Shown here one piece after another: positions 6,649-47,048 of a DNA stretch of 64,000 nt. Source of the stretch: Iphione sp. A-MEVVRFRX5. Lineage: Eukaryota. The stretch is from positions 109,120,001-109,184,000 of the forward strand of contig OZ320314.1 in assembly GCA_976226885.1 (NCBI GenBank), read 5' to 3'. The position numbers and the translations under genes were made by a program. Each line of letters begins with the position of its first letter. The first letter of the stretch is position 1. The notes below the pieces were generated by a model. It saw only the letters and a program-made list of their open reading frames with translations. It had not been told where the DNA came from and did not search any database.

Positions 6649-8315
6649 TACTACCCAAACAGAATATAGAAGAACACCTTAAATGATGGCTGAATCTAGT
6701 TCCTGAAATTAGATGAAAAAAGATGCTACAACACAGACTGTTCTTAATTCTGGTGATGTCCATATTGTGGTCTATCCACATTGTGATATTCAAATAAACT
6801 AGATTATAAAGTATTAATTTTACGCTGTATACTGTCCTTAATTCTAATAATGTCCGTATTGTGATTGGTCCGCATTGTGGTAATTGAGCGGATATGACTG
6901 GATCATCAAAATGACCTCCATATTAATATGCAAACATGACTATAAAACCCTGACAAAAACAGAACTGTGGGATCGGACTCGCATAGAATCTGGTTACATT
7001 TTAAAACGGTGGTGGAGCAGGAGAAGACTTATTACACGGACTGAAAGAGAAATGATTGTTCCGAGCATCAATTTCGCGGTGCGCATCTAGCATTCCACGG
7101 CGAGCACTGATGACCTGAGCGACTCGTACGGTCGCCACCGCCGCCTCCCGAGCTGCTCCATGACCGACGAGGCGTCACCTAGCGGCCAGACAACCACTGG
7201 CACCGACCTTATCAGGCGCCATAAATACGGCAGGAAGGGATCATCGCTCCCGCTTGTGGCCCCCACTCCCCCCCCCACCGACTCACCCAGCCGGCCTCAC
7301 ACCAGCCCCCCACCCCCGACACCTCCCCAGACATCTCTTAACTTCTTCCTACGGTCCCTCAACACACTTAGTCTTACGTAAAGGCTGTGAAGGCAGAGTT
7401 GCCATGAAGTCGTGCTTGTGCGAGGATATTCACAGCCAAGGGAAATTCTCTCAATTTTGCCTCATTAGAGAAATGAAACGGTTCTTTGCGTTTAGATTTT
7501 CCTGTTTAGAGAGACGACAACACAGTTGAGACACAACTGAAGTACAGACCACAGATGACCCCAAACCAACGAAGAGATGAAGACTTGAATAATATCAAAT
7601 TGGTTTATAGGTAATTCCTAATAATACCAGACCATGGGAGAGACTAGAACTATCGATTCCCTAGCTTCGTCGCCTCTGCGGGTTTCTATTGTACATGTAT
7701 ATCCAACCAGAAGCAATGGGGAGTGACACCATTAGTTGCATAAAGAATCAATAGGTATCCCTGCATAAAAACCAATTCATACACCCGAGAACAAATTGAT
7801 TCTAAGACGACGGAGTCTATAAAATCAAAACAAGCCAGTAAAATCCCCAGCGAAATGAATCCATTGAAAATCTTAGCGCCAGAGACGGAGGTGCATTTTA
7901 CACGATGATGAACCTATTCACAGAGTAGGACTGGCACAATCACACTCATCAGAAGGGGCCAACGGTAATCAGTTAATGCTCAGGAAAAAGGCAGGCAGGC
8001 TACGAAATATAGAAATACATTCGGTTGTTAAGAGGACAATTATTTACCTCTAGATAGTTTTATCACTTTTCTACACTAAAACGTAGACAAACTGCTTTCG
8101 TAGAGCACCAGTCAACTGTATTTAGTAATCATCCTAAAATAAGTTGCATGATTTAGGCAATGATGCCTTTTTCAATTTACTTGTAAATATTAAAGCTCTC
8201 AGCATAAACACAACATGGGTTACCATTCAGCTGTCAAATGGTTGCTAATATGAGCTAGTCCAATGGTAACTCATAACAAAGACCAACAATAGGACAAGAC
8301 AATTTTGCCCTTAAC

Positions 8316-8388
8316 AGTAGTGTAGTGTGGGACAGGATCGGCGTTCGTTTTGCTCACATGGCGATGAGACGTGGTTAAAGGTAGACGT
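8316..8388 (+). repeat. Left terminal inverted repeat of the Maverick
   Basis: It aligns without gaps to the reverse complement of 31839-31911, with about 57/73 identities by eye and 19/20 in the terminal 20 bp. Confidence 0.9.
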
Positions 8389-8818
8389 ACGTGCTTGAGG
8401 GTCTGATAGTGTGTTGAAACCTAGTTCTATTTGATAAGGCTCACACGTGAGGGAAGGAGGAGGGAGGGAGGGAGGGAGGAAGGAATGGAGGTATTAGATA
8501 TGGATATGGTGTTAAGAGTTTATTGATATTCTGATAATGAACAAAGCAATGGACGAATGAATGTAAATTTGGAGAAAGAAAGGAAGATTGGGGACAAAGG
8601 GTGTGTATTGAATTAAACAGAATAGTAAATGATTTGTGCGACTTACTTGTGAATAGTGTATGTAGAGGGATGATTACTGTGAATATGCAGATTAGTTCTA
8701 AGTCGTGAGTGATTGTTCACAGGAGGGAGACTTGCGGGTAAATGAGATGATCGAAAGGTGAATACATATATATATGTGTGTAGAGGAATAAAACTGTGTG
8801 AAACAGTTTGTGACTGTG

Positions 8819-9218
8819 ATGGCACAAGAACTAGTTGAGAGGACTTTTAAAATGGTTAGAGATAAAGGAGAAACAGTGGAGTTTTTAACAGAGGAAGGAA
8901 GCGCTAAGAGGAGGAAAATTCAAAGCGTACAGGAAAGTATGAGGAGAGTGGAGAAGATGAGGAAGAAACAGAGAACGAAGATGGAGAAAAAAAGGACAAA
9001 GGGACTAACAAATGAAGAGGTAATGTAGAGTGGTTGTAGGTATATATATATTATGTTTTGCTGACATAATTGAACTGTCAATTTGATAGTGACATATTAT
9101 ATATACATATTATATATATATATGTGTGTGTGTGAGGAGAATTGTTTTAGTGGATATGTATGTTGTATTATAGAGGGAACTACTTGCGGAGTTTATGGAG
9201 GTCTTCTCAGATGATGAC

Positions 9219-9282
<64 letters not shown>

Positions 9283-10045
9283 GTGACGTGACTGACAACA
9301 CATTAGAAGTTGCTAGTAATGACGATGATGATGATGATGATGATGATGATGAAGTTGCAATGGTAAGGAGACGAGACGGTGGTGGTGGTAGTGGCTTGAA
9401 ATCAATCAATTTGACAGACCGAATATTAATACTGATAATGATATTTATTGCTAATAGTATACATCATACAAATGATAAACAGTTAATTTTATATATATAT
9501 ATATATGTATAACTATATTATTATGTCATAAGGCGATTAATAGTGATTAGAATTAATTGTCAAAGCATAATTATATGATGATATGTAATGTTTGGAGGTA
9601 GAAGCTTGGACTTTCTACTGAGCTAAGCGTTGAAGCATGTAACTAAGTGTCTCGGAGATTGACAATTTGTTGATTGTTCATAGCAAACTGGTCTGGAAAG
9701 CGGCGAATTAGTTGGTGGTGGTTGTCCTGATAACTTTGCGTCTTCATTATCTGATGAGCTGGATGGCGACGACAACAAAAGCGACGACAGCAATGGTCCA
9801 AGCCTACCAGATGCCAGAGAGGAGGAGGAGGTGGTGGAGGTTAGTTGGTGCTGCGTTGTGTTAAAGTTCCTGAAATAAATGATAATGCGGTTTATTGCCA
9901 TGTGACATGACTGAACAGTGTTGTGCATTGAATAAACAAGTTTAATTGGTTTAATTGGAATCAGGTGATGGCAGTGGCAGAAGTTGCTCCTTCTACGTCT
10001 GCTGAGTCGAACAAGATGAACAGTTGTACTCCTACTGAACCTAAT
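8819..10045 (+). CDS. Predicted 5' coding exons of polB (8819-9019, 9174-9362, 9684-9839, 9965-10045): a basic helical segment followed by poly-Asp/acidic segments
   Basis: Four GT-AG introns, all phase 0, link stop-free exons into the frame of the large polB exon. Donors are gtaatg (9020), gtaagg (9363), gttagt (9840) and gtaagt (10046). Acceptors end in tatag (9173), catag (9683), atcag (9964) and tgcag (10137). No transcript evidence is available. Confidence 0.65.
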
Positions 10046-10137
10046 GTAAGTGGTAGAGTATGAGTGCGTGTTGATGGAGTTAACTGCTATGGGTTATCGT
10101 AGTCTGTTAATGGTAACTACTTATATATTACTTGCAG

Positions 10138-11937
10138 GTGAAGCGACATGCCTGTCCATATTGTAATCGAAAGTTTGCATACAAGGCAAATGCAGTAAAG
10201 CACGCTGTAACGTGTCAAGGGAAACAGAAACTGACGTGTCGAGTATGCCAGAGACGGTTTCAGACAGTGAAACAAAGGGAAACTCATGAAGAGCGATATC
10301 ACAAGAGACGTACACGAAGTTTTAGGTGCAGAAAGTGCAATGAGGAGTTTAGTAATAGAAGTGACTTGTACGAGCATGATGGAGAACAACATGGACATGG
10401 GGACGGTGATCTACAAAGACCAGAGTGGGAACAAGGGCGAGAGCCATGGATTCGAACGCGAACAAGACCAGATGGGAGTACAGAGATAGACAGAGGATTT
10501 GAAAGAACGTATGATGTGAACAGACGTCATATCTTAGCTCAACACATAATGGGGAGTGTTTCTGCGATATATAATTTTCCAACAAACAATTTAATCAATG
10601 GTAGGGATGAGTTCGTGAGGCAAGTGAATGAAATTGTCAATAATGAGAGAGAGGCGTTTAAAATGAATGTGGGGTTTGGAGTAATTTTGCGACATGTTGA
10701 GACTGAAAAGTATAGATATTTCGTTCCTTACAAAAATAGTAGCTTGTTTAATGAGCCAGTAATTATTTCTAAGCACAATGACATTGATAGTGTAGTTGAT
10801 AGACTTTCATCTATTGATGTAGACACTCATTTTACTGAGAGCAGGCCAGACACTAAATGGGTTTTAGAGGCAATAGTGAATGTAACTTATTTTGTATCAC
10901 GATTGGACTTTCCAATGGGAGCTGGATTTCTTCCAACATTTTTAAAGCGCAGACACTACATTGATACGCTAGATCATAATTGTGATGGCAGTCCAATAAC
11001 AGACTCTCTGTGTGCGTTCCGTTGTTTGGCAATGCATAACGGAAAAGCTGAGCTGATGGAACGAAGTGTGGAAGAATATTATGAGAAATGGAGGAGGTTT
11101 ATAGAAAGAAAGAGAGGAATAGTAATTAGTGCAGCTGCAAAAGAGTACGAAGGGATAAGTTTGGAGGAAATGACTGATTTTGAAGAGTGTTTTCAGGTAA
11201 ATGTGTATATTTTTGAGTTGACACGTCAAGAAACAGTGGTAATGCACTATCGACCATTTCATAAGTTTGAAAGGACGATGTACCTTAATATATATGAGGG
11301 CCATTTATCATTTGTGAACGACTTTCATAGGTATGCTCGTAAGTATGAGTGTGTGTTGTGCAGGCGTCATTTCAAAAGGAAATACCACTTAGAACGCCAT
11401 TTGAAAGGTTGTCCATTGCAAACTAAGTATGTATATAAAGGAGGATTTTACACAAATGCTCAGACAGTGTTTGAAATGATGGATGCGGTTGGGATATACG
11501 TTCCATCCTGTGACAGAACGTATACAGATTTTGCAGTATTTGACTGTGAGTCAATGTTGCGATCAATTCCAGTCGGAGATAGTCCCAAATTAAAGTGGAT
11601 ACATCGACATGAAGTAATATCAGTGGCGGTGAACAGCAATGTCCCAGGTTTTGACGAGCCAAAGTGTTTCATTTCTGAAAACATGGTCGTGTTGATGGAT
11701 AAAATGGTTGGTTATCTAGAGAAAATTCAAGAGGCTGCATTAATTAGGGCAAAAAGAAAATGGTCAGATGCTTTCCAACAAATAGAAATGATGAAACAAA
11801 GTGTGCAGCAAATGGACACAAGGAATATGTTACAAGTGAGAGCAATGAATGAGAGAGAGAATGAGGCTGACGAGGAAGGTGATGGTGATGAAGTGAATAG
11901 TACGGCTGAAGAGAGTATTGAGGAAGTAGTAAATGAC

Positions 11938-11978
<41 letters not shown>

Positions 11979-14503
11979 CGATGATGCTGGTGTTAGTGAA
12001 CATGACACAGACATTGGTAATGCAGGCTGCGACAATCCACATAGACGGACATTGACAAAGTTGTCAAAGCTTGAAGACCGGCTGGCCACATACGTGCGTA
12101 CTCTACCTGTTCTTGGGTTCAACTCAGGTAAGTATGATTTGAATCTGCTGAAAGCCGAGTTGTTGAGGAGACTGCAAAAGGATGGGAAAGAACTATTTGT
12201 GATTAAGAGGGAAAATGCATACATAACATTGGACAATGGCAGTTTAAAATTTTTAGACATTTCACAATATTTGACTCCGGGAGTTTCCTATTCAAAATTT
12301 TTAAAAGCTTATGGTGTTGAGGAAGAAAAGGGGGTATTTTGTTACGAGTACCTTGATTGTCCGGAAAAATTGAGAGAAACACAACTTCCACCGCATGAAG
12401 CATTTTATTCATCAGTAAAGAACGTAAACATAACAAGAGAGGAGTACGAGGGTTTGGAGAGGTTGTGGGTGCGGGAAGGAATGTCAACTTTGCAAGATTT
12501 ATTAGAATACTATAACAAATTAGATGTTGGTCCATTTGTTGAGGGTGTGAGACGGTTGCAGATGTTTTATTTTGACAGACAAGTGGATGTATTTAAAGTG
12601 TCTGTATCAGCACCTGGAGTGGCTCGGAGACTGTTGTTTGAGTCTGCAATGAAAGAGGGCGCAAGGTTTCCATGTTTTGGGCAGAGAGATGAGGATGCAT
12701 ATCAGACATTTAAAAAAAATATTGTTGGAGGTCCCGCAATTGTGTTTACTCGGGCACATGAGAAAGGAAAGACGTTCATTAGGAACACGACAAACAAATG
12801 TCAATCAATAATTGGTTTGGATGCAAATTCATTATATCTCAGTTGCATAGGAAGGGAACATGGGACAGGGACGTTTGTAAGAAGGAGGGCAGAAACTGGG
12901 TTTAGGCAAGAGAAGCAGCCAGTGTCTGTGCTAAGTATTGTATGGATGGAATGGGAGTCATTCACTCGAGGCGAACACATAGCCCATATTGGTAATCGAT
13001 ATGAGGGGGAGGTTCAGGTGGGACCATATAAAGTAGATGGAATGTCATTTGTTTCTAGGACAGTGTTCGAGTTCAATGGCTGTTATTTTCATGGACATAC
13101 ATGTCTAGTTGGGAAAACAAATGAGTCAGAACGAACAAAAAGACAGGAAAGAACCAAAATGCGTAAACAGTTCATTGAGGAGCAGGGGTTTACTGTAATT
13201 GAAATGGAAGAGTGTAGATTTATCAAAATGATTGGTGAGTCAGAGGAGATGAAAAAGTTTGTTGATCAGTTTGTGCCGTGCTTTAGTAAGTTTCACAAGG
13301 ATAAGGTGAGTGAGGAGCAGATATTGCAAGGGGTTTGTGATGGAACGTTATTTGGCGCAATTGAAGTGGACATTGAAGTGCCAGAGCATTGGCCAAAAGG
13401 AAAAGAAAGGTCTATTTCACCAAGAGCGTATTTTGCAGAAATGTGTCCGTTATTTGGAAACGCAGTTGTAGGGATGATGGACATAGGTGACCACATGAGG
13501 CAGCATGTCAAAACTCACAAATTATCAGAGAAGCCACGTCATTTATTGGTAGGAGTGATGAAAGCAAGGAAGACTCTGATTTTGACTCCGCTTTTAAAGT
13601 GGTACATTGAGCATGGAATGAGTGTTACAAGGATATATCAGTTGTTTGAGTTTGTTCCCAAAGCATGCTTTTTGTCATTTGTCAATGACGTGACAGAGGC
13701 ACGAAGGCAGGGGGACAGTGACACAGACAAGGCAATAATTGCTGATACTATGAAACTTATAGGGAATTCAGCATATGGTGGCATTATTATGCAAAAGGAG
13801 AGACAGTGTAATGTAAAATATTACAAAAGTGCTCGGCAGGCTGTAACTGCAGTGAATGCTCCTCGTTTTAGAAGAATTGTTGAAATGAAAGATCTATATG
13901 AGGTGGAGCTAGCAAAAACACGTATAGTATTGGATATGCCAGTATATGTGGGATTCTCTATTTTGCAATATGCAAAACTAACAATGTTGTCATTTTATTA
14001 TGACTGTATTGATAGACTGTTGGACAGAAATAATTATGAGTATGTAACTATGGACACAGACAGTGCATATATTGCACTTTCAGAGTCAACACTGACAGAA
14101 GCAATGACAGACGAAGGGAGAAAGGAGTACCAGACTGATACATTAGGGAACTGTAATGACAGCTCTGTTCCTAAATGGTTTATGAGAGAATGTTGTGAGA
14201 AGCATAAGAAGTTTGACAGGCGTGTTCCAGGTTTGATGAAAGAAGAAGCGAAGGGCGACAGAATTATTGCTTTGTCAAGTAAGACATATGTACTGGAAAG
14301 TTGTGAGAACGGATCATCGTCATCACAATCGTCATTGACTGTAAAGCTTAGTTGCAAAGGAGTTTCAAAGGCTCGAGTAACTGATCCTGTTCAGACGTAT
14401 AAGAGTGTTTTAGAATCTCAACAAAGCAAGTCAGGAATTAATAAAGGTTTTAGAGTATGGATGGGAACAGTCTGTACGTATGAGTTATCAAGAGAGGGGT
14501 TTA
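10138..14503 (+). CDS. polB: Protein-primed family B DNA polymerase, main exon, interrupted near its 3' end by a Tigger insertion
   Basis: It carries ExoI FDCES, ExoII FNSGKYD, ExoIII YNKLD and Pol motifs A (LDANSLY), B (KLIGNSAYG) and C (MDTDS). It also has N-terminal C2H2-like zinc fingers and a Vsr/PD-(D/E)xK-like insert (VGPYKVDG...EFNGCYFHGH). The ORF-track stop at 14520 lies inside the inserted transposon. Confidence 0.95.
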
Positions 14504-17008
14504 CCGGCGACCCCCCTTAATCGGACCCCTCTCTTCCGGAATCATCGTATAACCGGATGGGTTTTGAATAACCAAGGTTTTTTCTATTAAAATTATATTA
14601 CTTAACCGGACCCTGCCTTTCCGTATTCGGACGAAATTTAGCTGCATTTTAGAGCATTTAACATAGGAAATACAGCCATTTAACCGGAGGCGACTTGTCT
14701 GCGCGACAATCGATAGGGGTCTGTTTGAAGTACATAGCGTCAGTTCCTCAGACAACACGGGACATCCGTTGACGCGCTGAGTAACTCCATAACAGAGGGG
14801 GTGGGTCGGGGACTTCTGAGGGCTTATCACACTTAGGTGAGAGGAGGCGGTAGGTGAACAAAGAATTTACAGCCCGCGGCCTTGAGCCCCTCCCCTTCGT
14901 TATTGTCTTACCGCTGTAGAGGCGTGCCGGCCTGGTCGTCCTCCAGGGCTGAGAATTCAGCTTAAAAGCAGGAGGGGTGGAGACAACGGTATCCATTCCT
15001 CCTGGAAACGCCACGATGTCTCAACCACCAGCCAAGCGACGCAGAGTATGCATTACCAACGCGCAGAAGAAGGAGATCTGTCTGTACAAGGTCGAGCACC
15101 CTGGGACGTCCCAAGCAGATATCATCACGAAATTCTCCTCGAAGTGGGGAATAGCTGTACCCCGGTCGACAATATCGGACATCCTTAAGAAATCCGCCCA
15201 ATGGATCGGCATGTCAGAGGAGGAGGGCGCCTTATGTCGGCAACGGTGCCCAATGCAGTCTCAGCTCGAAGCTGGCCTTATGTTGTGGTTCAACGACGTG
15301 CGATCCAGAGGCGCCATCGTACGTGATGATATGATCATTCGCCAGGCCCAAAAGCTTGGCGCTCAGATGGGCATCACTACATTTCATTATAGCAAGGGCT
15401 GGCTTGGACGTTGGAAAGTGCGCCAGAACATTCGATGCCACAAGCAGCATGGCGAATCAGCGTCAGCTGATATGGCCGTCGTCGAGGAAGGACGATCCTC
15501 CCTGCAAGATCAGCTACAGGGGTACGACCCTGAAGATATTTACAACATTGACGAAACAGGGTTGTTCTTCAGGCTCAAGCCCTCCTCCACTCTTGCCACG
15601 GGCCCAGTAAAGGGTGAAAAAAGAAACAAAGACAGAATTACAGTCGTCCTGGCATGCAATGCTACTGGAACTGATAAACTGAGGCCTCTCGTCATTGGCA
15701 AATCCGCCAAGCCTAGGTGTTTTTCGAGGGGATTCGACCCAGGGATGTACGTTCACTACCGCAACAACCAAAAGGCATGGATGACATCAAAGGTCTGGGT
15801 TGATTACCTCAATATGTTGAACGACCGGGCGAAGGGTCAGGGCCGCCGATATCTCATCCTGGTCGACAATGCTGGGCCTCACAAGACGACGGAGCGGTTC
15901 AGTAACATCACCCTGAAATTCCTCCCACCAAACACCACTGCACATATCCAGCCATTGGATGCTGGTATTATTGCCTCCTTCAAGGCCCAATATAGAAGGA
16001 GGCTAGTTGACCACTATTTGGAGTGTGTTGAGAAGGATGAACCTATGGTCACTGACATCAGAAGGGCCATCTTGATGCTGCATGAGGCCTGGGCCACAGT
16101 CACCACCACCACCATCAAGAAGTGCTGGGCCAAGGTCAACATCCTCCCCGGCTCCAACACCACCAGCAACACTACCACCGACATCAGTGAGGATGCCTCT
16201 GATGATGATGAGGAGGACATTCCACTGTCAGAGCTACAGGCTCGAATCCAAGCACTGCCCACTGAGGAGGGGCAGACAATGATGTCAGCCCAGGAGTATT
16301 CAAATGTGGATGCTGAAGCAGAGACCCATGGGGAATTGACGGACGAGGCCATCCTCAGCCTTGTCAGGCAGCCTGAGGTGCCTGAGTCTCAACCTGATGA
16401 GGACGAGGAGGATTCCGAAGATGTCCCTCCACCACCTCTCACTCTCAAGGAGATTGCTAAAAGTGTGGATACACTTGTCAGATTGTGTGAGGAGAGGCAC
16501 AACATTACTGGTGTGCAGTTCCTCAGAGGGCTACTCCAAGATGAGACAGTGTACAAGTCCAAAAGACAGACCCTCATCAAGGACTTCTTCAAGGCTTGAT
16601 GGAAATTGACTTTTAATTTTTTTTCAAAATTTTTTTATCTTGGTCATTTTTTATTATTATTGTACCTTTTGTATGGGTTGTACATATGTTCTCTGTAATA
16701 AATACCCATTTCCTGAACTGAATTTGACTTTCCAATGATTTGTCATAAGTTCATAAAAATTCTTAAAAATATAATTTTTTGCACATACTTTACTATTATG
16801 ACAGTTTCCCCCACCAGGAGACGCATGGGACGCCTTTAAAATCAATCCAGATCGATAATCAATAATATCCATTCGGTTCCCATACTTTACCATTATGACA
16901 GTTTTCCCCACCAGGAGACGCATGGTGCTCGGGTCGCCATTCCGGACCCCCCTCCAACCGGACATATTTTCGGATTCCCCTACTCCTCCGGTTAGGCGGG
17001 GTCGTCGG
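14504..17008 (+). mobile_element. Autonomous pogo/Tigger DNA transposon nested in polB
   Basis: TA is duplicated at 14502-14503 and 17009-17010. The TIRs CCGGCGACCCCCCTTAATCGGA and CCGACGACCCCGCCTAACCGGA match at 18/22. A 34-bp internal direct repeat lies at about 16796 and 16893. Excision restores the polB frame exactly. Confidence 0.95.
15016..16599 (+). CDS. Tigger/pogo (CENP-B-like HTH + DDE_1) transposase, DD30D
   Basis: It has N-terminal HTH-psq/CENP-B-like regions (ITNAQKKEIC; LEAGLMLWF...GWLGRWK) and catalytic motifs YNIDETGLFF, LVDNA and QPLDAGII, with 30 residues between the second and third Asp. The ORF is intact. Confidence 0.95.
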   Translation: MSQPPAKRRRVCITNAQKKEICLYKVEHPGTSQADIITKFSSKWGIAVPRSTISDILKKSAQWIGMSEEEGALCRQRCPMQSQLEAGLMLWFNDVRSRGAIVRDDMIIRQAQKLGAQMGITTFHYSKGWLGRWKVRQNIRCHKQHGESASADMAVVEEGRSSLQDQLQGYDPEDIYNIDETGLFFRLKPSSTLATGPVKGEKRNKDRITVVLACNATGTDKLRPLVIGKSAKPRCFSRGFDPGMYVHYRNNQKAWMTSKVWVDYLNMLNDRAKGQGRRYLILVDNAGPHKTTERFSNITLKFLPPNTTAHIQPLDAGIIASFKAQYRRRLVDHYLECVEKDEPMVTDIRRAILMLHEAWATVTTTTIKKCWAKVNILPGSNTTSNTTTDISEDASDDDEEDIPLSELQARIQALPTEEGQTMMSAQEYSNVDAEAETHGELTDEAILSLVRQPEVPESQPDEDEEDSEDVPPPPLTLKEIAKSVDTLVRLCEERHNITGVQFLRGLLQDETVYKSKRQTLIKDFFKA

Positions 17009-17010
17009 TA

Positions 17011-17576
17011 CATATTTTTATGTAAAGAGAATGGTTCACTCTGATGGCATTCATACATCTCCACTGAATATTACTTTATGTCCATGGAATAGGAATGAGC
17101 ATGACTATTACATTATTAGTCGACCTTGGCAAGTACTAAGTCCACAGTACATTTGTGTGATGGGGGATGGGTTTGTGTCTGTGGAGCACATGTTCTTACA
17201 CAGAATGGCGACTTTTCATGGCGAGGTGGACATTGCTAGGGCAATTGTGTCCTCATCAGATCCAAAGGAGTTTAGAGTGTATGGAGGAATGGTAATACAG
17301 TCAGAGGAGTGGCGAAATGCGAAAAGGAAAGACGTCATGAAAGAGTTGTGTATAAGGAAAACTAGATTGTTAGGAACTTTAATCACACACAAACTAAATC
17401 ATAATAAGCACATAGTGTATGCAGATAGAGACAACTATTGGGGGGTTGGAATGAGTGAAAGGATGGCAGAGCTTTCATCTCGGGATGAGTTTAGGGGCAG
17501 GAACATTTTAGGAGAAATATGGGAGAACATTAGAATTAGAAGTAGGTTGGTCTCGCAGGGAATGATTGATTGGTGA
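17011..17576 (+). CDS. 3' end of polB (YFYVKR...DGIHTSPL) fused to a NADAR/YbiA-like domain
   Basis: It is in frame with the main exon after removing 14504-17010. NADAR-like motifs are SVEHMF, I...SDPKE...G, W...K.DVM......K, D.YWG.G and G.N.LG.I...IR. Confidence 0.85.
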
Positions 17577-17592
17577 GGATTTGCATTATGTA

Positions 17593-17632
<40 letters not shown>

Positions 17633-17747
17633 ATGTGTGTGACACGAGTGCTGGCGTTGAACAACAATAAACACTACCTTTTAACCGTATGTCGAGTTAC
17701 TGGTTATCATTGTGGGGATTAGTCAGGATAAGATTGAGGAGATCAAA

Positions 17748-18371
17748 ATGGAAATAGAGATACCTCTGTATCGTTTTGCAACGCCCAGTACAATTATGGT
17801 GAGTGGTGCAACTTCAACAGGGAAAACCCAGTTTGTAATTCAGTTAATATTGGAACGAAGGAAATTGCTTGAGGCACCAGTTCCAGAAAGAATTATATAT
17901 TGTTACGGAACATGGCAGGATGAGTTTAGTAAGATTGCAGACCATGTTGAGTTTCGAGAGGGAGTCAACGTTGAAGACATAAAGCACCCATGTGGAACAT
18001 TAATAATATTTGACGATTTAATGGACGATGTTGTTAAAAATAATGATGTCAGAAATTTATTTACAAGAGGTTCACACCATGATAAAATAACAGTTGTGTA
18101 TCTTAATCAAAACATATTCTGTCAAGGGAAATGTGCGAGATCAATTGCACTTAATTCACAGTATATGGTTTTGTTTCGTAATCCAAGGGATGTCCAGCAA
18201 ATTGCTCGTTTGGGAAGTCAACTAGGCATGCCAGAAGTGAAGGCAGCATATAAAGACGCAACTAAGGAAGCATATGGCTATTTAGTAATTGATCTCCACC
18301 CGCGAAACAGTTCGGATGTGAAACTCACGAGCCACATTTTCTCTCATGAGGTTTTAATTTGGTACAAGTAA
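17748..18371 (+). CDS. A32/FtsK-like genome-packaging ATPase
   Basis: It has Walker A GATSTGKT, Walker B IIFDDLM, and the RGSHH...QN and DAT...YGYLVIDL segments typical of Polinton ATPases. The first ATG is at 17748; the ORF track starts at GTG 17712. Confidence 0.93.
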   Translation: MEIEIPLYRFATPSTIMVSGATSTGKTQFVIQLILERRKLLEAPVPERIIYCYGTWQDEFSKIADHVEFREGVNVEDIKHPCGTLIIFDDLMDDVVKNNDVRNLFTRGSHHDKITVVYLNQNIFCQGKCARSIALNSQYMVLFRNPRDVQQIARLGSQLGMPEVKAAYKDATKEAYGYLVIDLHPRNSSDVKLTSHIFSHEVLIWYK

Positions 18372-18411
18372 CTAAAGCAGAGGTGAAAGGGACGCAAGAA
18401 GGGAAGACACC

Positions 18412-18894
18412 ATGGCAACCAGTCTTTTGAATGAGCACGCAGGATATATTCGCCTTATTTTGACTAGTCCAAGTCGAACACAGGTCATCGCATTGTTTGA
18501 TACAGCAACTCACGGACAGTTGGATGCTATACGAGAAATTATTCAAAATTTGTTAAGTTTACCAGTAAGAAATGACGTTAAACAATACATGAACAGGAGA
18601 CAGGGACTGTTAAAGAAACTGGCAGACCCTAAAGTTTCTTACAGAGCAAAATCAGCACTTGTAAGTAAACATTACCGTCAACTGTTGCACTTGTTTAGAG
18701 CAGTCAAGAGTGATCTATGGCACCTGACGTCACCGTCATCTAATTTAACAACAAGTGAAACAGAGTTGTTTCCGTCAGTGTCGACATTGGAGAGAGTGAA
18801 AGTAGGCGTAAAGAAAGAGAAGGACAACGGAGAAACGTCAGAGAGAAACGAACAGGGGGATGAAGAGGGGTACGATGAGGTGGACGCAATATGA
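18412..18894 (+). CDS. Conserved small Maverick ORF of unknown function (resembles the ORF called GasderminX in adintoviruses)
   Basis: It sits directly after the ATPase, and its pattern (L..A...QL.AI.EI..NLL...LKKLA...S...K..L) is recalled from Maverick accessory ORFs. The family name is tentative. Confidence 0.55.
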   Translation: MATSLLNEHAGYIRLILTSPSRTQVIALFDTATHGQLDAIREIIQNLLSLPVRNDVKQYMNRRQGLLKKLADPKVSYRAKSALVSKHYRQLLHLFRAVKSDLWHLTSPSSNLTTSETELFPSVSTLERVKVGVKKEKDNGETSERNEQGDEEGYDEVDAI

Positions 18895-19262
18895 GGAAAC
18901 TTGTATGTATTCCGTATGAACGTTATATTGCTTTGCTTGAGTTGGAAGAAAAGAATGAAACAAAAAGTAATTTGGGAACCGTTCCAACGACATCGTCTCT
19001 GTCACAGTCAGTTACTGAAAGAAGCAAAAAAGGGGGCAGTTCTAAGAGTGAACGAACTGGTCAGAAACGACAGTATACAGAAAGAGTGGCTACGTCATCA
19101 CCATCGCATCCTCTGGTTTCACCGCAGGCAATATCAACAACAAACATTTTAGAACCCCCAGTAAAGCTACTGTCATCATTTCCTCCTCCACCTGGAATCC
19201 CAGCAAACGACAAACAACCAAAAAGAGTGCTTGATTGGACTAAAGGATGGACGAGTATTTGA
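18891..19262 (+). CDS. Small Maverick ORF of unknown function
   Basis: It begins MRKLVCIPYERY and ends PPPPGIP...W..W, an architecture recalled for ORFs preceding Maverick integrases. It overlaps both neighbours. Confidence 0.65.
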   Translation: MRKLVCIPYERYIALLELEEKNETKSNLGTVPTTSSLSQSVTERSKKGGSSKSERTGQKRQYTERVATSSPSHPLVSPQAISTTNILEPPVKLLSSFPPPPGIPANDKQPKRVLDWTKGWTSI

Positions 19263-20374
19263 CTTCAGTGTATTATGATTCAACTCAGCCTGAATCTTTT
19301 GGAGGGTCTAAAGCACTTTACAGACGTGCTAGGAAAGACGGAAAGATATATTCGTTCCAACAAATTAAAGATTGGTTACGAGGACAGGAGACGTATACGC
19401 TGTTTGCACCCTCAAGTAGAAGTGGAAAGGTGAAACGACCTCGTGTGGTTGTTTCTGATAAGTTTGACCAGTTTGATGCGGACACAGCTAACATGTCAGC
19501 GTGGAAAGCATCTAATAATGGCATGGGGTATTTTCTTGTTGTAATAGACATATTTACTCGGTTTGCGTGGACAAGACCACTGCTTTCACTTTCAGCTAAA
19601 GATACTCTCGTCGCTCTTCGGTCAATTATGAGTGAACAGCTTTGTCGTGTGTTACGCACAGACGGTGGAAGTGAATTTAATAATAGATGGGTTAAGCGTT
19701 TCCTAAATGAAAAAGGAGTGCAGCATGTTGTTACTAGAAATGAAGTTAAAGCAAATTTTGCAGAACGACTTATAAAGACGATCAAAACCAGGCTTACTAG
19801 GATTATGTATCATGAACAATCTCACAAGTGGGTAGATAACCTAGTTGATGTCACGCGGGCATATAATGACCGACACCATCGTTCCATTGGAACTAGTCCA
19901 AGACTGGCCATATCTGATCAAACTGATAAGGTTGATTTATGGAGAGCGCAATATGGAATTAAAAATGAGGTTGCTCCTCGTTTTAAACCTTTCAAGTTTC
20001 AAGCTGGGGACGTTGTTCGCCTTTCTCATTTTAGACGACCTTTCACTAGAGCATATGACGAACAATGGACCCACGAGTTGTTTGTTATCACAAGGCGCTC
20101 ACGTCAGCAAGGTATTCCACAGTACACTATTAAAGCTTGGAATAATGAAGAGATAGACGGAAGATTTTATGAAGAAGAACTTGCAAGAGTCAACGTGACA
20201 GACAATACCCATTATAAAGTTGAAAAACTCATCCGCAGGAAAAAAATCGATGGAAAAGATGGGTATGTAGTACGCTGGCTTGGCTGGCCACGACAGTATG
20301 ACTCATGGGTGAGTGCTGATGAGTTAACAAACATCGAACATGTACATACTCGCAACACCACAGCTGAGCGCTGA
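19247..20374 (+). CDS. Retroviral-type (RVE) integrase with C-terminal chromodomain
   Basis: The DDE core is QFDAD / VIDIFTRFAW / RTDGGSEF / AERLIKTIK. The chromodomain is YKVEKLIRRK...YVVRWLGWPRQYDSWV. Confidence 0.95.
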   Translation: MDEYLTSVYYDSTQPESFGGSKALYRRARKDGKIYSFQQIKDWLRGQETYTLFAPSSRSGKVKRPRVVVSDKFDQFDADTANMSAWKASNNGMGYFLVVIDIFTRFAWTRPLLSLSAKDTLVALRSIMSEQLCRVLRTDGGSEFNNRWVKRFLNEKGVQHVVTRNEVKANFAERLIKTIKTRLTRIMYHEQSHKWVDNLVDVTRAYNDRHHRSIGTSPRLAISDQTDKVDLWRAQYGIKNEVAPRFKPFKFQAGDVVRLSHFRRPFTRAYDEQWTHELFVITRRSRQQGIPQYTIKAWNNEEIDGRFYEEELARVNVTDNTHYKVEKLIRRKKIDGKDGYVVRWLGWPRQYDSWVSADELTNIEHVHTRNTTAER

Positions 20375-20729
20375 TACTCATCCCGCTAATTCACCAACAG
20401 ACTTTTACGTAGACCTTATTCGACCTATTGTCCTTCTCGGAGAATGGGAATGTGGGCTAGTGAGTGTTCATGTGTCTTCTATGCCGCCAGGGCGTGGTGT
20501 TGCTGTTTGTGCTGACTTTGCACAAATTAATTACATGGCTGGAAAGATACAGCCAACAGTTCGGATTATTCGAAGTTCTTCCAGTGAGTTTTCCCACCCG
20601 TGGTACATTCCGATTGGGACCTGTCGTATTGAACGGTTTCGCGTTTATACGACGCTACTACCGGGTGAACGCGGATCGCTTCCTCATATTACAAGTGCTG
20701 TGTTTCATCTAAGGCTGACTGCACAGTGA
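20340..20729 (+). CDS. Minor capsid (penton-like) protein
   Basis: The N-terminal motif HPANSPTDFYVDLIRPIVLLGEWECGL is typical of Maverick pentons. It lies between the integrase and the MCP. Confidence 0.8.
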   Translation: MYILATPQLSADTHPANSPTDFYVDLIRPIVLLGEWECGLVSVHVSSMPPGRGVAVCADFAQINYMAGKIQPTVRIIRSSSSEFSHPWYIPIGTCRIERFRVYTTLLPGERGSLPHITSAVFHLRLTAQ

Positions 20730-20734
20730 CAGAC

Positions 20735-21100
20735 ATGAATTATATTCCCTACGTTGCTCGCTCCAATGCTTTTGACCATGCTGTTCGCAAACAGTCCCAT
20801 TATGTCGGACGTGGGCCTCCTTTGACCCTTGTCACTCCAACAGAACAAGCGGTTGAACGCGCCAAAGCAAATCTTACCAAGAATCTGAAACCTTCAGATA
20901 AAACGAATTGTTCTCACTCGTCATCTGACAGAGCGGTGTCGCGAAAGAGAGGGACTACTTCTTCCACGTCGTGTGTGCAGCGAAAAAAGAAAAGGGGAAC
21001 AGCGACTCACCAAAAAAGAAAGCAGAGCAAAGCAGTGAAAGGAGAGAAGAAAAAGAAGAAAAGTTCAACTACTACTAAAAGGAAATTCCGAAAACACTAG
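20735..21100 (+). CDS. Basic putative core/DNA-condensing protein
   Basis: It has a YVGRG...LVTPTEQAVERAK motif followed by a very Lys/Arg-rich tail, and lies immediately upstream of the MCP. Confidence 0.7.
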   Translation: MNYIPYVARSNAFDHAVRKQSHYVGRGPPLTLVTPTEQAVERAKANLTKNLKPSDKTNCSHSSSDRAVSRKRGTTSSTSCVQRKKKRGTATHQKRKQSKAVKGEKKKKKSSTTTKRKFRKH

Positions 21101-21114
21101 TGACCATCATCACC

Positions 21115-31911: not shown

Positions 31912-32622
31912 CTTAACTATATGTTGCCCTGCTACCCAAGTTCTGAATATCATAGAAAATATTCCACTTAGCCGTGCGTGCCAAACTTGCCCGCATAGCT
32001 GAGTTGCCCGCAAGGTGACTTTCTGCTGTACAGTGGAGTTATATGATCAATAACTTGAAACTTATTCCTTTTGCAAATTGCCCCTACTTCCCCCCCACAC
32101 ACACCTCCGCGGATAAAAAGATTTTCTTGACCAAATCTCACCTAGACCTGACAAAAATAACGTGAAAACGCTGACTCGAGAATACCTGGCGATTAGTGGT
32201 ATAATTCTCCACCAATATATGATAGATCAACGCCAAGAGAGATGTAGAGAAGAACCAGACTGCCCATGATTGAGGAATGATCTTAATTGTGTTCTACTCT
32301 CTTCAAATCTGAAATGTGTTTGAATTCCCACCTATTTACATGATTGGGCCCTAATTTAAACCTTGACCTATTCGCGCTAATACCATGCACCACTGATATT
32401 TTTGTTATCTTAAAAGGGTCAGAGATTCCGATTTTTCGCAGTAATTTTTGGACATTGTGGATGTATAGAGAGAATTCCAAAACCGAACGATCACCGTTTC
32501 CGCCAAAATCGTTCGGATTTGGGATAATTCGTATTTGGAATTGTGGCCTGAGGCCACTCTCAATTTCACACAGTTAGGGGTGGCCTCAGGCCCCCCTTAA
32601 CTCTTTCCATACCCAGAAGACT

Positions 32623-32975
32623 GAAATAAATCATATAATGAATGTGATCTAATCTAAACCTGAAATAATGGAGAGAAAACAACCAAAAACTGACTTTTGA
32701 CCATGCATATCTATAAAAATGAAATAAATCATATAATGAATGGGATCTAATCTAAACCTGAAATAATGGAGAGAAAACAACCAAAAACTGACTTTTGACT
32801 ATGCATATCTATAAAAATGAAATAAATCATCTAATGAATGGGATCTAATCTAAACCTGAAATAATGGAGAGAAAACAACCAAAAACAGACTTTTGACTAT
32901 GCATACCTAAAAAAAATGAAATAAATCATATAATGAATGGGATCTATTCTAGGCCTGAAATAATGGAGAGAAAAA
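32623..32975. repeat. Tandem repeat, about 98-bp unit, about 3.6 copies
   Basis: GAAATAAATC unit starts lie at 32623, 32721, 32819 and 32918, downstream of the second transposase. Confidence 0.92.
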
Positions 32976-33044
32976 CTCTGCAAAAGAAAAAAAAGAGAAC
33001 CTGAAAAAAAACAAAAAAAAAACATGTAATTAATGTTAACTTAT

Positions 33045-34607
33045 CTATTGCCTCTTGAAGAAGTCTGCAATGGTCTTCTGCTTGCACTTCTTCACTGCTG
33101 CCATTTCTGTCTTCTCCAGGATAGCCCTAAGAGAAGATACAATGTCAGTGTTGCCTTGGTCCTCCCAGAAGGACACAGCCCAGTCCAGGCCCTGTCTCAC
33201 TTGCTTGATGGTAACAGGCTCCACATGCTGCTCTTCCTCCTCCTCCTCCTCCTCCTCTTCCTCCTCTTCTCTCTTGCGCTTGCCTACCAGCTGGATGATG
33301 CTCTGCTCATCCATCTCTCCTGATGTAGGCTCCTGGGAGTCACAGGACACATAATCATCTGCTGTTCCTGTGTCCTCCCCTTGCTTGTCCTGGAGGTCTT
33401 GCAGCAGTGTCCTCAGCTGTGAGAGTGGGGTGTTGTCCTCTTCTTCCTCTGTGGCTGGACTGGTGGAATCTGGTAGGATGTCAACATGCTTCCAACACTT
33501 GGCAATGGTGGTGCTGGAGACAGCCTGCCAGGCCTCATGGATCATCAGGATGGCCCTCCTGACATCTGAGGTCTGGGGTTTATCTGACTCAATACAGGTC
33601 AGGAAGTGCCTGACCAGCCTCCTCCTGTACTGTGCCTTGAAAGAGGCAATGATGCCTCCATCCAAGGGCTGCAGATGACTGGTGGTGTTTGGAGGCAGGA
33701 AGATGATCTTCAGGTTCTTGTAGTTCTTGGTTGTCTTGTGGCTTGCAGCATTATCACAGAGGATTACATATCTCCTCTTCTGCCCTCTGGCTCTGTCATC
33801 TAACTTCTTCAGGAGATCTTCCCACAGGGTAGAAGTCATCCAGGCTTTGGTGTTGTGTCTGTATGTAACATACATGGAAGGATCAAAGTCCTTCCCAAAA
33901 CACCTAGGTCTGGCTGACTTTCCAATCACAAAGGGCCTGATCTTCTCAGTCCCTGTGGCATTGCAGCACAATGCCACAGTCAGCCTGTCCTTGGACCGCT
34001 TCTCACCCTTCACTGGCCCTGTGGCAAGAGTGGTTCCTGGCTTCAGTCTGAAGAAGAGCCCTGACTCATCCACATTGAAGATGTCATCAGGATCATAACC
34101 TTTTAGGAGATTCTTGATGTCTTGCCTTCCTTCCCCTACAAGCTGGTCAGAGACTGATGCAGCTTCACCATGGGTCTTGTACACCTTGATGTTGTTCCTC
34201 TGTCTGAATCTCTGGATCCAGCCCTTGCTGTATCCAAAGGTCTCATCCACTTGCAGCTCCTTGCCAAAGACCTTGGCCTTGTCCACCAGAACTTCATCTG
34301 ACACTACTGCTCCTCTGGCCCTCATATCATTGAACCAGAGGAGGAGGGCCTTCTCCAGGTCAGCCTGTTTGGGACATCTAGTCCTGTCATGGTTGCCCTC
34401 ATCATCAGGCAGGGACAGCCAGTGGTCCTTTTTCTTGAAGATGTCTGTCAGGGTAGACTTCCCAACTGGGAAGCCAAACAGGGCAGAGAAATGCCCAATG
34501 ATGCCTGTCAGAGAAGCAGTGGGGTGGCTGGCCTTGTATTGGCAGAGAAGCTTCTTCTGCTGGTTGGTGATGTTGGTCCTCCTTCTCTTTGCCTGTGGTT
34601 GAGACAT
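33045..34607 (-). CDS. Tigger/pogo transposase, DD30D, closely related to the one at 15016
   Basis: It begins MSQPQAKRRR and has FNVDESGLFF, LCDNA and QPLDGGII motifs. The ORF is intact. Confidence 0.95.
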   Translation of the reverse strand: MSQPQAKRRRTNITNQQKKLLCQYKASHPTASLTGIIGHFSALFGFPVGKSTLTDIFKKKDHWLSLPDDEGNHDRTRCPKQADLEKALLLWFNDMRARGAVVSDEVLVDKAKVFGKELQVDETFGYSKGWIQRFRQRNNIKVYKTHGEAASVSDQLVGEGRQDIKNLLKGYDPDDIFNVDESGLFFRLKPGTTLATGPVKGEKRSKDRLTVALCCNATGTEKIRPFVIGKSARPRCFGKDFDPSMYVTYRHNTKAWMTSTLWEDLLKKLDDRARGQKRRYVILCDNAASHKTTKNYKNLKIIFLPPNTTSHLQPLDGGIIASFKAQYRRRLVRHFLTCIESDKPQTSDVRRAILMIHEAWQAVSSTTIAKCWKHVDILPDSTSPATEEEEDNTPLSQLRTLLQDLQDKQGEDTGTADDYVSCDSQEPTSGEMDEQSIIQLVGKRKREEEEEEEEEEEEEQHVEPVTIKQVRQGLDWAVSFWEDQGNTDIVSSLRAILEKTEMAAVKKCKQKTIADFFKRQ

Positions 34608-34754
34608 GGTGTCTGGAGTTCTCTGGAGTTCTCTGGAGTGCTCTGGAGTGGTACTCAAGGTAGAGTGACTGACAGTGGCTGGGCACCTCCCTTATATCCC
34701 CCCATGGGTCGGGAAAGCACAGGAAATCGCGGGAAATTGTCCTGGCTTGGAGGG

Positions 34755-35162
34755 GCCCCCTCCAATTCGCTACTCTTTGATGACGCAGTCGCCACGGAGA
34801 GGCCCTGGTCGGCCGGGGCGAGCTCAGGTCCCCTCCAAGTCGCTAACCTTTGATGACGCAGGACAGCTCTCACCACGATCGACACCTATGGAGAGGCCCC
34901 GTCGATCGGGGCGAGCTTGGTTCCCCTCCAATTCGCTACTGTTTGAGCGACTCTCACCTACAGAGAGGCCCCCGGTCGATCGGGGCGAGCTCAGTTCCCC
35001 TCCAAGTCGCTAACCTTTGAACAGCTCGCACCTCGATCGACACCTATGGAGAGGCCCCGTCGACCGGGGCAAGCTTGGTTCCCCTCCAATTCGCTACTGT
35101 TTGAGCAACTCTCACCTACGGAGAGGCCCCCGGTCGATCGGGGCGAGCTCAGTTCCCCTCCA
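34755..35162. repeat. Alternating A/B GC-rich repeat array upstream of the second transposase
   Basis: GAGAGGCCC units start at 34796, 34890, 34962, 35048 and 35120, with spacings of 94, 72, 86 and 72. Confidence 0.9.
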
Positions 35163-46340: not shown

Positions 46341-47048
46341 TATTTTTTTACCTGACTTTTTCCTGAATACAGTAGACTCCCTCGATTCCGGACACCCTTC
46401 GTTCTGCGTCAAATCGTCCGCATTTGAGACGCGTCCGCATTGGAGACGCGGCCAACCAACAGACAAGGGGTCAAACTAGAAAATGAAATCCCTTTCTCCT
46501 TCTCTCTCTACAACTGATATGTACATACCAAATACTCTGAAACATCCAATAAGTGCCGAATTTGATGACTTTAAGTCCAAAAAGTGCTGAATTTGATGAA
46601 TAAAAGTCCAAAAAGTGCTGAATTTGAGGACTTAAAGTCCAAAAAGTGCTGAATTTGATGACTTAAAGTCCAAAAAGTGCTGAATTTGATGACTAAAAGA
46701 GGTGTGAGATACAGTCCCTCCAGGGTGTCAGAGACATCAGAGAGGTCGCTGTTGACACCCCCTACCTCTCCCACCTCCCTCTCCAGGGTGTGAGAGACAT
46801 CAGAGAGGCCCAAATTCGCGCGAAAACATATACAGAGGTGTAAAATCCTACTCTTTGATGGGTGTCAGGGGGTGCGCAGGCTCCTGTGAGCTGTCCACAG
46901 GGAGGCGCCCCCCGATTTTTAGCGTCCGCATTGGAGACGTCAGCTCATAATGCTTAACAATAGGAAAAGAGTTCGTTCTGCGTCAAATCGTCCGCATTTG
47001 AGACGCGTCCGCATTGGAGACGCGTCCGCGGGGAGGGAGTGGCCTGTA
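46341..47048 (-). repeat. Inverted copy (708 bp) of 45397-46104
   Basis: The arms are reverse complements with matching end points, and the ORFs at 45632-45874 (+) and 46571-46813 (-) are identical. The loop is 46105-46340. Confidence 0.95.

What the first reader, a model, noticed from the sequence alone, without database searches (positions are those of the whole stretch)
14490..17576. Hidden PolB-NADAR fusion: a viral polymerase ending in a putative DNA de-ADP-ribosylase
Deleting 14504-17010 yields ...YELSREGF-T-YFYVKRMVHSDGIHTSPLNITLCPW..., the normal Polinton PolB C-terminus. It continues without a stop into about 150 aa carrying NADAR/YbiA motifs. NADAR proteins are established N-glycosidases, and the antitoxin of DarT1-NADAR removes ADP-ribose from guanine in ssDNA. 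Guanine-targeting DNA ADP-ribosyltransferases are known in animals (butterfly pierisins, clam CARP-1). The inference is that a NADAR tethered to a strand-displacing polymerase could clear ADP-ribosyl lesions from viral DNA as a counter-defence against an uncharacterised host system. Ordinary ORF calling misses the fusion because the transposon splits it.
Basis: partly seen in the sequence, partly recalled or inferred. Interest (0 to 1): 0.9.

Follow-up and report, generated by a model that had tools for sequence, protein, structure and literature searches.

The report
Maverick polymerase ending in atypical NADAR domain
A virus-like Maverick element in this invertebrate-type genome encodes a DNA polymerase that naturally ends in a NADAR-fold domain, here split once by a jumping gene, but the domain lacks two of the three residues known to be needed for removing ADP-ribose from DNA, so the proposed repair role is unproven.

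Summary
Window 8316-31911 is a complete Maverick/Polinton insertion with inverted termini and a 6-bp target duplication. Its protein-primed polymerase gene is broken once, by a pogo-like transposon. The piece after the insertion opens with the family's ordinary polymerase C-terminus and runs without a stop into a NADAR domain: Pfam 54 bits, profile hits to PDB 8bau and 2b3w, and a confident model whose only fold matches are those two structures. At least 44 database proteins carry the same polymerase-NADAR architecture uninterrupted. On a polymerase tree the NADAR-bearing forms fall into two clades, so the fusion is inherited and retained.

The functional reading is only partly supported. Three residues were shown by mutagenesis to be needed for guanine de-ADP-ribosylation. 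The window keeps the first Glu but has Met for the Lys and Tyr for the catalytic acid. Only 2 of 44 fused domains have that acid, and Tyr or Phe replaces it in 28, while the fold core is conserved. I read it as a distinct, probably ADP-ribose-directed accessory domain with altered or lost hydrolysis, and dead in this copy. I found no paper describing this fusion.

The parts
8316..31911 (+). Maverick/Polinton element, 23,596 bp including the nested transposon
   Evidence: Inverted termini (I6) beginning AGTAGTGTAGTG and ending CACTACACTACT. It contains the polymerase, a P-loop ATPase and an rve+chromo integrase.
8310..8315 (.). Left copy of the 6-bp target-site duplication, CTTAAC
31912..31917 (.). 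Right copy of the 6-bp target-site duplication, CTTAAC
8316..8393 (+). Left terminal inverted repeat of the Maverick
   Evidence: I6: 83 nt, 77% complementary
31834..31911 (-). Right terminal inverted repeat of the Maverick
   Evidence: I6
10132..17576 (+). Polymerase-NADAR gene, broken once by one transposon insertion, with no stops or frameshifts inside either piece. In order it encodes C2H2 fingers, an N-terminal domain, exonuclease/polymerase with a Vsr-like insert, the family's C-terminal segment and NADAR. The 5' start is unresolved.
17097..17534 (+). NADAR domain (Pfam PF08719 match)
   Evidence: 54.4 bits against a cut-off of 35.1; 8bau at 1.2e-29 and 2b3w at 1.9e-23; pLDDT 92.4. TM 0.65 and 0.61.
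14977..16599 (+). Transposase gene of the nested pogo/Tc5-like DNA transposon (540 aa, intact)
   Evidence: DDE_1 at 8.4e-41 and HTH_Tnp_Tc5 at 1.7e-10; terminal repeats, TA duplication and 2,505 bp.
17712..18371 (+). P-loop ATPase (probable A32/FtsK-type packaging ATPase)
   Evidence: Walker A and B are visible. Pox_A32 (E 0.016) and FtsK_SpoIIIE (E 0.12) are both below cut-off.
19247..20374 (+). Integrase with chromodomain
   Evidence: rve at E 2.7e-7 (31.2 bits, just under the 32.6 cut-off) and Chromo at 31.0 bits against 25.1.

Best explanation
Shown: a full Maverick/Polinton is integrated at 8316-31911. Its protein-primed polymerase gene natively ends in a NADAR-fold domain. This architecture is inherited with the polymerase in two clades of marine-invertebrate-type Mavericks. 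In this copy the gene is cut once by a pogo-like transposon, so no fused product can be made here.

Inferred: the fused domain belongs to a separate NADAR subfamily. The fold core and about half of the ADP-ribose contacts are kept (first Glu, two Trp, Arg, Asp). The phosphate-binding Lys is often lost and the catalytic acid is replaced by Tyr or Phe. The most likely role is an ADP-ribose-directed accessory module tethered to the replicase. It would recognise ADP-ribosyl adducts met during element replication, or process them by an atypical mechanism, as a counter to host ADP-ribosylation. It would not be a canonical guanine de-ADP-ribosylase.

My confidence in the anatomy is about 0.95 and in the mechanism about 0.4.
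For: Element: inverted termini plus a 6-bp duplication.

Fusion: P0001-P0004 (44-55% identical in the polymerase, 1574-1780 aa) carry PF08719 in one protein. The two window pieces abut on P0001. 44 proteins have a polymerase C-terminus followed about 8 residues later by NADAR. These make up 35 of the 150 best NADAR representatives.

Inheritance: 16 NADAR-bearing tips need only 3 changes on the polymerase tree, against a mean of 15.3 in shuffles.

Constraint: NADAR identity tracks polymerase identity, for example 47 against 55% and 41.5 against 47%. Core columns are kept in 39-42 of 44.

Fold.

Active site: the window reads E/M/Y at the positions of P. nicotianae E43/K50/E125. Across the fused clade these are E in 17/44, K in 23/44 and E in 2/44, with Y in 21 and F in 7. 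The full triad occurs in 2/44, against 65/119 other NADARs. All 12 full-length fused proteins lack the acid. Residue roles are from PMC11543638.

Parallel: NADAR sits beside the replicase in polyproteins of invertebrate RNA viruses (PMC9503650) and at the end of a BEL/Pao Pol protein.
Against: No activity or binding data exist for any member. Tyr could itself take part in catalysis. Met at the Lys position also occurs in abalone host NADAR repeats that keep the Glu, so that change alone need not inactivate. Some database copies may be decaying endogenous elements, which would blur conservation counts. Residue mapping rests on a profile alignment, not on superposed coordinates. The structure model used an alignment containing canonical NADARs. 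I found no host ADP-ribosyltransferase in the window, and the hosts of the fused proteins are unnamed.
Confidence: 0.45

Rival explanations
1. One reading: the domain is an active guanine-ADP-ribose hydrolase that clears ADP-ribosyl lesions from the element's DNA ahead of, or behind, the strand-displacing polymerase.
For: It has a true NADAR fold. All NADAR subtypes tested so far hydrolyse guanine-ADPr in vitro (PMC11125620). Phage NADARs are thought to protect phage DNA from host transferases (abstract of PMC11825919). Tethering to a DNA polymerase fits a DNA substrate. The first Glu, Asp130 and both Trp are kept in the window's clade.
Against: The equivalents of the Lys and the catalytic acid abolish activity when mutated. 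In the window they are Met and Tyr. The acid is absent in 42 of 44 fused domains and in all full-length ones. The known variants at that site are Glu, Asp or His, and never an aromatic.
Confidence: 0.17
2. The domain acts on protein ADP-ribosylation or on soluble ADP-ribose-derived immune signals. It would play the part that Macro and NADAR domains are proposed to play in RNA-virus polyproteins, and the polymerase merely carries it.
For: Iyer et al. 2022 argue this for NADAR domains embedded next to the RNA polymerase of nidoviruses, hepe-like viruses and picornaviruses of invertebrates. NADAR is also fused to a BEL/Pao retrotransposon Pol protein. So the common factor is a mobile-element replicase in invertebrates, not DNA synthesis as such.
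Against: The same missing catalytic residues argue against hydrolysis of any N-glycosidic ADP-ribose bond. The BEL/Pao and RNA-virus-type examples seen here keep the canonical triad, so the polymerase-fused type stands apart from them.
Confidence: 0.15
3. The domain is a catalytically dead remnant kept for a role unrelated to ADP-ribose, such as folding, oligomerisation, or binding DNA or the priming protein.
For: The fold core is conserved while the catalytic positions vary widely, with 33 different triads among 44. 90 of the 114 closest polymerases do without the domain.
Against: Pocket residues W89, R93, D130 and W133 are still kept in 24-42 of 44. The aromatic at the acid position is itself preferred (28 of 44), which suggests a ligand site under selection.
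Confidence: 0.18
4. There is no fusion. On this reading the NADAR ORF is a separate downstream gene, cargo of the transposon, or a chance ORF.
For: In this window it is listed as a separate 181-aa ORF with its own ATG.
Against: The frame is open upstream of that ATG and encodes the polymerase family's own C-terminal segment. At least 44 natural proteins have both parts in one chain with constant spacing. The domain lies outside the transposon's terminal repeats.
Confidence: 0.02

Closest known systems
NADAR superfamily enzymes with solved structures: Phytophthora nicotianae NADAR (PDB 8bau) and E. coli YbiA (PDB 2b3w)
   Same: They share the fold (Foldseek TM 0.65 and 0.61, with every other match at noise level) and sequence family (profile E 1.2e-29 and 1.9e-23). 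The first Glu, Trp89, Arg93, Asp130, Trp133 and the C-terminal Gly/Asn/Gly columns are kept.
   Different: The window has Met for the phosphate-binding Lys, Gly for Arg79 and Tyr for the catalytic Glu. It is fused to a 1,450-residue polymerase instead of standing alone.
DarT1-associated NADAR antitoxins (E. coli C7, Geobacter lovleyi; PMC11543638)
   Different: No transferase gene lies next to it. The catalytic Asp/Glu and the Lys are missing. It is eukaryotic and sits inside a mobile element.
Phage NADARs (T4 gp30.3 type; orphan antitoxin-like counter-defence, PMC11125620, PMC11825919)
   Same: These too are virus-encoded NADARs, thought to protect the virus's own DNA from host ADP-ribosylation.
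   Different: Phage forms stand alone, have His at the catalytic position and are active in vitro. Here the domain is fused and has Tyr.
NADAR and Macro domains inside polyproteins of invertebrate RNA viruses (Iyer et al. 2022, PMC9503650)
   Same: An ADP-ribose-processing fold is joined to the replicase of a virus of invertebrates. The host groups overlap (molluscs, crustaceans, annelids).
   Different: Those partners are RNA polymerases. That paper mentions neither Polintons, Mavericks nor DNA polymerase fusions. A NADAR-rich 2,914-aa protein of unknown origin seen here (P0157) has the canonical triad in one of its three NADAR stretches.
Other domain fusions of protein-primed polymerases in Polinton-like elements (helicase SF1, terminal protein, vOTU; PMC12721341)
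   Same: All are accessory domains fused to the protein-primed polymerase of this virus group.
   Different: None of the described partners is NADAR, and all are N-terminal or helicase modules. My searches for NADAR or YbiA together with Polinton, Maverick or protein-primed found only author surnames.

Membership tests
NADAR superfamily (Pfam PF08719) | Profile match above the curated cut-off | tested here: met
   54.4 bits against 35.1, residues 23-168 of the right piece. A profile of relatives hits 8bau and 2b3w.
NADAR superfamily (Pfam PF08719) | Helical core flanked by small beta sheets (YbiA-like fold) | tested here: met
   Model pLDDT 92.4 and pTM 0.85. The Foldseek top two are 8bau and 2b3w at probability 1.00, and the next match has E>2.
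NADAR superfamily (Pfam PF08719) | Conserved Glu and Lys (P. nicotianae E43 and K50; E. coli C7 E88 and K95) | tested here: inconclusive
   Glu is present and Lys is replaced by Met in the window. In the fused clade Glu occurs in 17/44 and Lys in 23/44.
NADAR superfamily (Pfam PF08719) | Hydrolysis of the N-glycosidic ADP-ribose bond | not testable with these tools
YbiA subfamily | Catalytic Glu in the last beta strand (P. nicotianae E125) | tested here: not met
   The window has Tyr. The fused clade has Glu in 2/44, Tyr in 21 and Phe in 7.
DarT1-associated (BC4488) NADAR antitoxins | Asp at the catalytic position and a neighbouring DarT1 transferase gene | tested here: not met
   There is no Asp at or two residues before that column. 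No transferase domain appears in any neighbouring ORF scanned.
Maverick/Polinton | [quoted passage not shown] | tested here: met
   780 relatives at E<=0.001, many carrying PF03175. Invariant columns D897/N899/L901/Y902, K1208/G1211/N1212/G1216 and D1308/T1309/D1310/S1311 lie where polymerase motifs A, B and C are expected (established knowledge). PF03175 itself does not score on the window protein.
Maverick/Polinton | Retrovirus-like integrase | tested here: met
   rve at E 2.7e-7 (31.2 bits, cut-off 32.6) plus Chromo at 31.0 bits (cut-off 25.1) in ORF 19247-20374.
Maverick/Polinton | Terminal inverted repeats and a 6-bp target-site duplication | tested here: met
Maverick/Polinton | Jelly-roll capsid proteins, adenain-like protease and packaging ATPase | tested here: inconclusive
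   The ATPase is supported only weakly. Pfam and PHROGs found no capsid or protease.
pogo/Tc5-like DNA transposon (the nested insert) | DDE_1 transposase with a Tc5 HTH, short terminal repeats and a TA duplication | tested here: met

The most novel reading that the evidence does not exclude
A whole lineage of animal Mavericks has fused NADAR domains to the replicase because marine invertebrates use ADP-ribosylation of nucleic acids as a defence against mobile DNA, perhaps through pierisin/CARP-1-type or still unknown transferases. A BEL/Pao retrotransposon and RNA viruses of the same host groups have done the same independently. On this reading, part of what is catalogued as 'animal NADARs' is encoded by such elements, and the Tyr-type domain is a new mechanistic class of NADAR.
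Probability: 0.15. Interest if true: 0.85.

Novelty: new variant of a known kind. Interest (0 to 1): 0.55.

Why it matters
Cihlova et al. 2024 state that the roles of NADARs in eukaryotes, animals included, are unclear. They list molluscs, echinoderms, cnidarians and Branchiostoma among NADAR-bearing animals. The named relatives of this polymerase come from the same groups.

If many 'animal' NADARs are in fact the C-terminal domains of Maverick polymerases, the distribution of the family needs re-reading. The fusion also points to an ADP-ribose-related conflict between invertebrate hosts and their DNA elements. Finally, the aromatic-for-acid substitution defines a NADAR type that no study has characterised.

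Tried and rejected
Searches and scans that led nowhere:
- A single-sequence search of the PDB with the NADAR piece gave no hit; a profile was needed.
- Pfam PF03175 does not score on the window polymerase, even at E 10.
- A profile of the polymerase against the PDB listed zinc fingers and Vsr but no polymerase among the 60 rows shown.
- Two word-index protein searches found nothing new: the NADAR region of P0001 and the window's NADAR piece.
- Cluster look-ups gave no organism names for any fused protein, so the host range of the fusion stays unknown.
- Pfam and PHROGs found no capsid or protease genes.
- The repeat finder missed the transposon's short terminal repeats; a purpose-written scan with a control found them.
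- Ten NADAR proteins with long N-termini were scanned for further mobile-element fusions. One was an ARH-NADAR fusion and the others had no second domain of note.

Readings rejected: NADAR as transposon cargo, as a separate gene, or as a chance ORF (see rivals).

Steps not done:
- The two pieces were never joined.
- No full-length model was made.

Slips, which I state as required:
- Early in my reasoning I repeated the finding's break coordinates to check the frame arithmetic.
- I recalled short canonical NADAR/YbiA and family-B polymerase motif strings from memory as leads.
- My first notebook entry gives the ORF-tool bounds of the two pieces.
- I used the position numbering, not the letters, of HMMER's printed profile line to map PDB residues to columns.
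- I built a profile HMM of alignment A1 in the sandbox for that mapping.
Full report
**What is there.** The region sits inside a 23.6-kb element at 8316-31911. Its ends are inverted repeats (about 80 nt, 77% complementary, starting AGTAGTGTAGTG). They are flanked by a direct 6-bp duplication, CTTAAC, at 8310-8315 and 31912-31917. Inside, on the + strand, the order is:
- a very long polymerase gene;
- a P-loop ATPase at 17712-18371, with Walker A and B visible and weak Pox_A32/FtsK matches;
- an integrase with a chromodomain at 19247-20374.

Together with the polymerase this is the Maverick/Polinton signature. Pfam and PHROGs recognised no capsid or protease genes, and I had no searches left to pursue them.

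**The polymerase.** The ORF starting at 10132 encodes, in order:
- C2H2 zinc fingers;
- a conserved N-terminal domain;
- an acidic low-complexity linker;
- an exonuclease/polymerase region interrupted by a Vsr-like endonuclease module.

Pfam PF03175 does not score on it directly. Its C-terminal 556 residues nevertheless match 780 database proteins, the best at E 2e-190. Many of them carry PF03175 and C2H2 fingers. The named ones come from bivalves, gastropods, echinoderms, cnidarians and amphioxus. The invariant columns of an alignment with 16 relatives include the acidic and Lys/Asn/Gly clusters expected for polymerase motifs A, B and C.

**The break.** Similarity to relatives stops four codons before the ORF's stop. 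What follows is a pogo/Tc5-like DNA transposon. It has an intact 540-aa DDE_1 transposase at 14977-16599 and a 2,505-bp body. Its terminal inverted repeats match at 20 of 24 positions, against a best of 17 in 200 control scans, and it has a TA duplication. A second pogo-like gene lies just outside the Maverick; its transposase is 50% identical and belongs to a different family. The polymerase-NADAR gene therefore has one break, an insertion. There are no stops or frameshifts within either piece. I did not remove the insert or join the pieces.

**The piece after the insert.** The frame is open upstream of its first ATG. Its first residues are the ordinary C-terminal segment of this polymerase family. 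37 of 47 NADAR-less relatives with short tails end with that segment, and its columns are kept in 39-43 of 44 fused relatives.

It then runs into a NADAR domain, for which the evidence is:
- PF08719 at 54.4 bits against a cut-off of 35.1;
- a profile of relatives that hits the only two NADAR structures, 8bau at 1.2e-29 and 2b3w at 1.9e-23;
- an AlphaFold model with pLDDT 92.4 and pTM 0.85;
- Foldseek, which returns those same two structures (TM 0.65 and 0.61) and then only noise.

**Is the fusion natural?** Yes.
- The four closest polymerases (P0001-P0004, 1574-1780 aa) carry PF08719 in the same chain.
- On P0001 the left piece aligns up to the very residue at which the right piece starts.
They make up 35 of the 150 best NADAR representatives and 13 of the top 20.
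- Of the 114 nearest polymerases that reach the C-terminus, 15 have the NADAR tail and 90 end within 60 residues.
- On a neighbour-joining tree of the polymerase region, the 16 NADAR-bearing tips need 3 state changes, against a mean of 15.3 and a minimum of 12 in 500 shuffles. They form clades of 10 and 5, and the window falls in the clade of 5.
- NADAR identity falls with polymerase identity but stays well above chance, at 47/55, 41.5/47, 41.5/45 and 36/44% for the four closest.

So the domain is inherited with the polymerase and retained.

**The active site.** Schuller et al. 2023 (PMC11543638) give the residue roles. In P. nicotianae NADAR, E43 and E125 hold the distal ribose, and K50, R79, W89, R93, D130 and W133 hold the phosphates. 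In E. coli C7 NADAR, mutating the equivalents of E43, K50 and the E125 site abolishes guanine-ADPr hydrolysis or rescue from the toxin. The E125 position is Glu in YbiA-type, Asp in DarT1-linked and His in phage NADARs.

I mapped these positions through the profile alignment to 8bau. The chain numbering is offset by two, which I checked against G78, V81, D130 and W133. The window reads as follows:

| P. nicotianae residue | Window |
|---|---|
| E43 | E |
| K50 | M |
| R79 | G |
| W89 | W |
| R93 | R |
| E125 | Y |
| D130 | D |
| W133 | W |

Across the 44 fused domains:
- E43 is kept in 17 and K50 in 23.
- E125 is kept in 2, with Tyr in 21 and Phe in 7.
- The full triad occurs in 2 of 44, against 65 of 119 other NADARs.
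- None of the 12 full-length fused proteins has the acid.
- Fold-core columns (W89, K104, G136, G152, N154, G157) are kept in 37-42 of 44.

The placement of the aromatic is firm. In P0002 the segment aligns to 8bau without gaps, with identical residues on both sides of the site.

**Reading.** The fold is under constraint, but the chemistry known for NADARs is not. I therefore take the domain as a separate, aromatic-type NADAR subfamily. It is most likely still directed at ADP-ribose-like ligands, since half the contacts are kept, but it would bind them or process them atypically rather than act as a canonical guanine de-ADP-ribosylase. The counter-defence idea remains attractive by analogy:
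- phage NADARs protect phage DNA;
- NADAR and Macro domains sit beside the replicase in RNA viruses of invertebrates;
- one BEL/Pao retrotransposon Pol protein in my hits also ends in NADAR, with a canonical triad.

It is nevertheless an inference. In this copy the gene is broken, so nothing is made here.

**Novelty.** The described fusion partners of protein-primed polymerases are helicases, terminal protein and vOTU. The survey of viral NAD/ADP-ribose systems mentions neither Polintons nor Mavericks. Full-text searches combining NADAR or YbiA with Polinton, Maverick or protein-primed returned only author surnames, or nothing. Subscription-only papers were not searched. The fusion is thus an apparently undescribed architecture of two known families.

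**Limits.**
- The hosts of the fused proteins are unnamed.
- The gene's 5' start is unresolved. No in-frame ATG lies where relatives begin, and an acceptor-like sequence lies just upstream.

Noticed in passing
window 45397-46104 and 46341-47048: A perfect (100%) 708-nt inverted repeat separated by 236 nt, with 31-nt tandem units inside each arm. It could be a foldback element or an assembly artefact.
   Followed up: no
window 8000-14000 versus 26000-32000: GC skew is mirror-symmetric across the Maverick: +0.31 to +0.41 on the left and -0.24 to -0.38 on the right. Part of the right-hand skew comes from a 545-aa Ser/Thr/Pro-rich low-complexity ORF at 26733-28370, whose status as a gene is unknown.
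   Followed up: partly
window about 12950-13160, inside the polymerase gene: A Vsr-like (very short patch repair) endonuclease module is inserted between the exonuclease and polymerase parts. Profile positions 934-998 hit PDB 1vsr, 1odg and 1cw0 at about 6e-6, and two relatives are annotated as such by JGI.
   Followed up: partly
window 10132-10400 and about 11340-11410, polymerase N-terminus: There are C2H2 zinc fingers at the start of the polymerase and one more near residue 405. An N-terminal domain has invariant Asp291, Cys294 and His391. It may be the vOTU-like module reported for other polymerase fusions, but Pfam gives no OTU match.
   Followed up: partly
protein P0238 (database): A BEL/Pao retrotransposon Pol protein (Peptidase_A17, RT, Integrase_H2C2, DUF5641) ends in a NADAR domain with the canonical Glu-Lys-Glu triad. 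This is a second class of animal mobile element with a replicase-NADAR fusion.
   Followed up: partly
proteins P0121 and P0125 (Haliotis rufescens LOC124129589 and LOC124138828): Abalone host proteins carry 7 and 3 tandem NADAR domains. Most repeats have Met at the Lys position but keep the catalytic Glu, and the first repeat has Tyr like the polymerase-fused type.
   Followed up: partly
window 32603-35178: A second pogo-like transposase gene at 33045-34658 (- strand, 537 aa) lies just outside the Maverick's right end. It is 50% identical in protein to the nested one and is flanked by a 98-nt tandem array at 32603-33014 and a roughly 80-nt array at 34803-35178.
   Followed up: partly
window 60870-62105: A degenerate tandem array with a 51-nt period, 60-75% identity between units.
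   Followed up: no
window about 9980-10140: The long polymerase ORF has no in-frame ATG where relatives start, and the frame upstream is full of stops. A pyrimidine-rich, acceptor-like sequence directly precedes the ORF. This may mean an upstream exon or a damaged start, and it is unresolved.
   Followed up: partly
window 9181-9366 and 11846-12022: Long GAT (poly-Asp) trinucleotide runs occur both upstream of the polymerase ORF and in its acidic linker.
   Followed up: no
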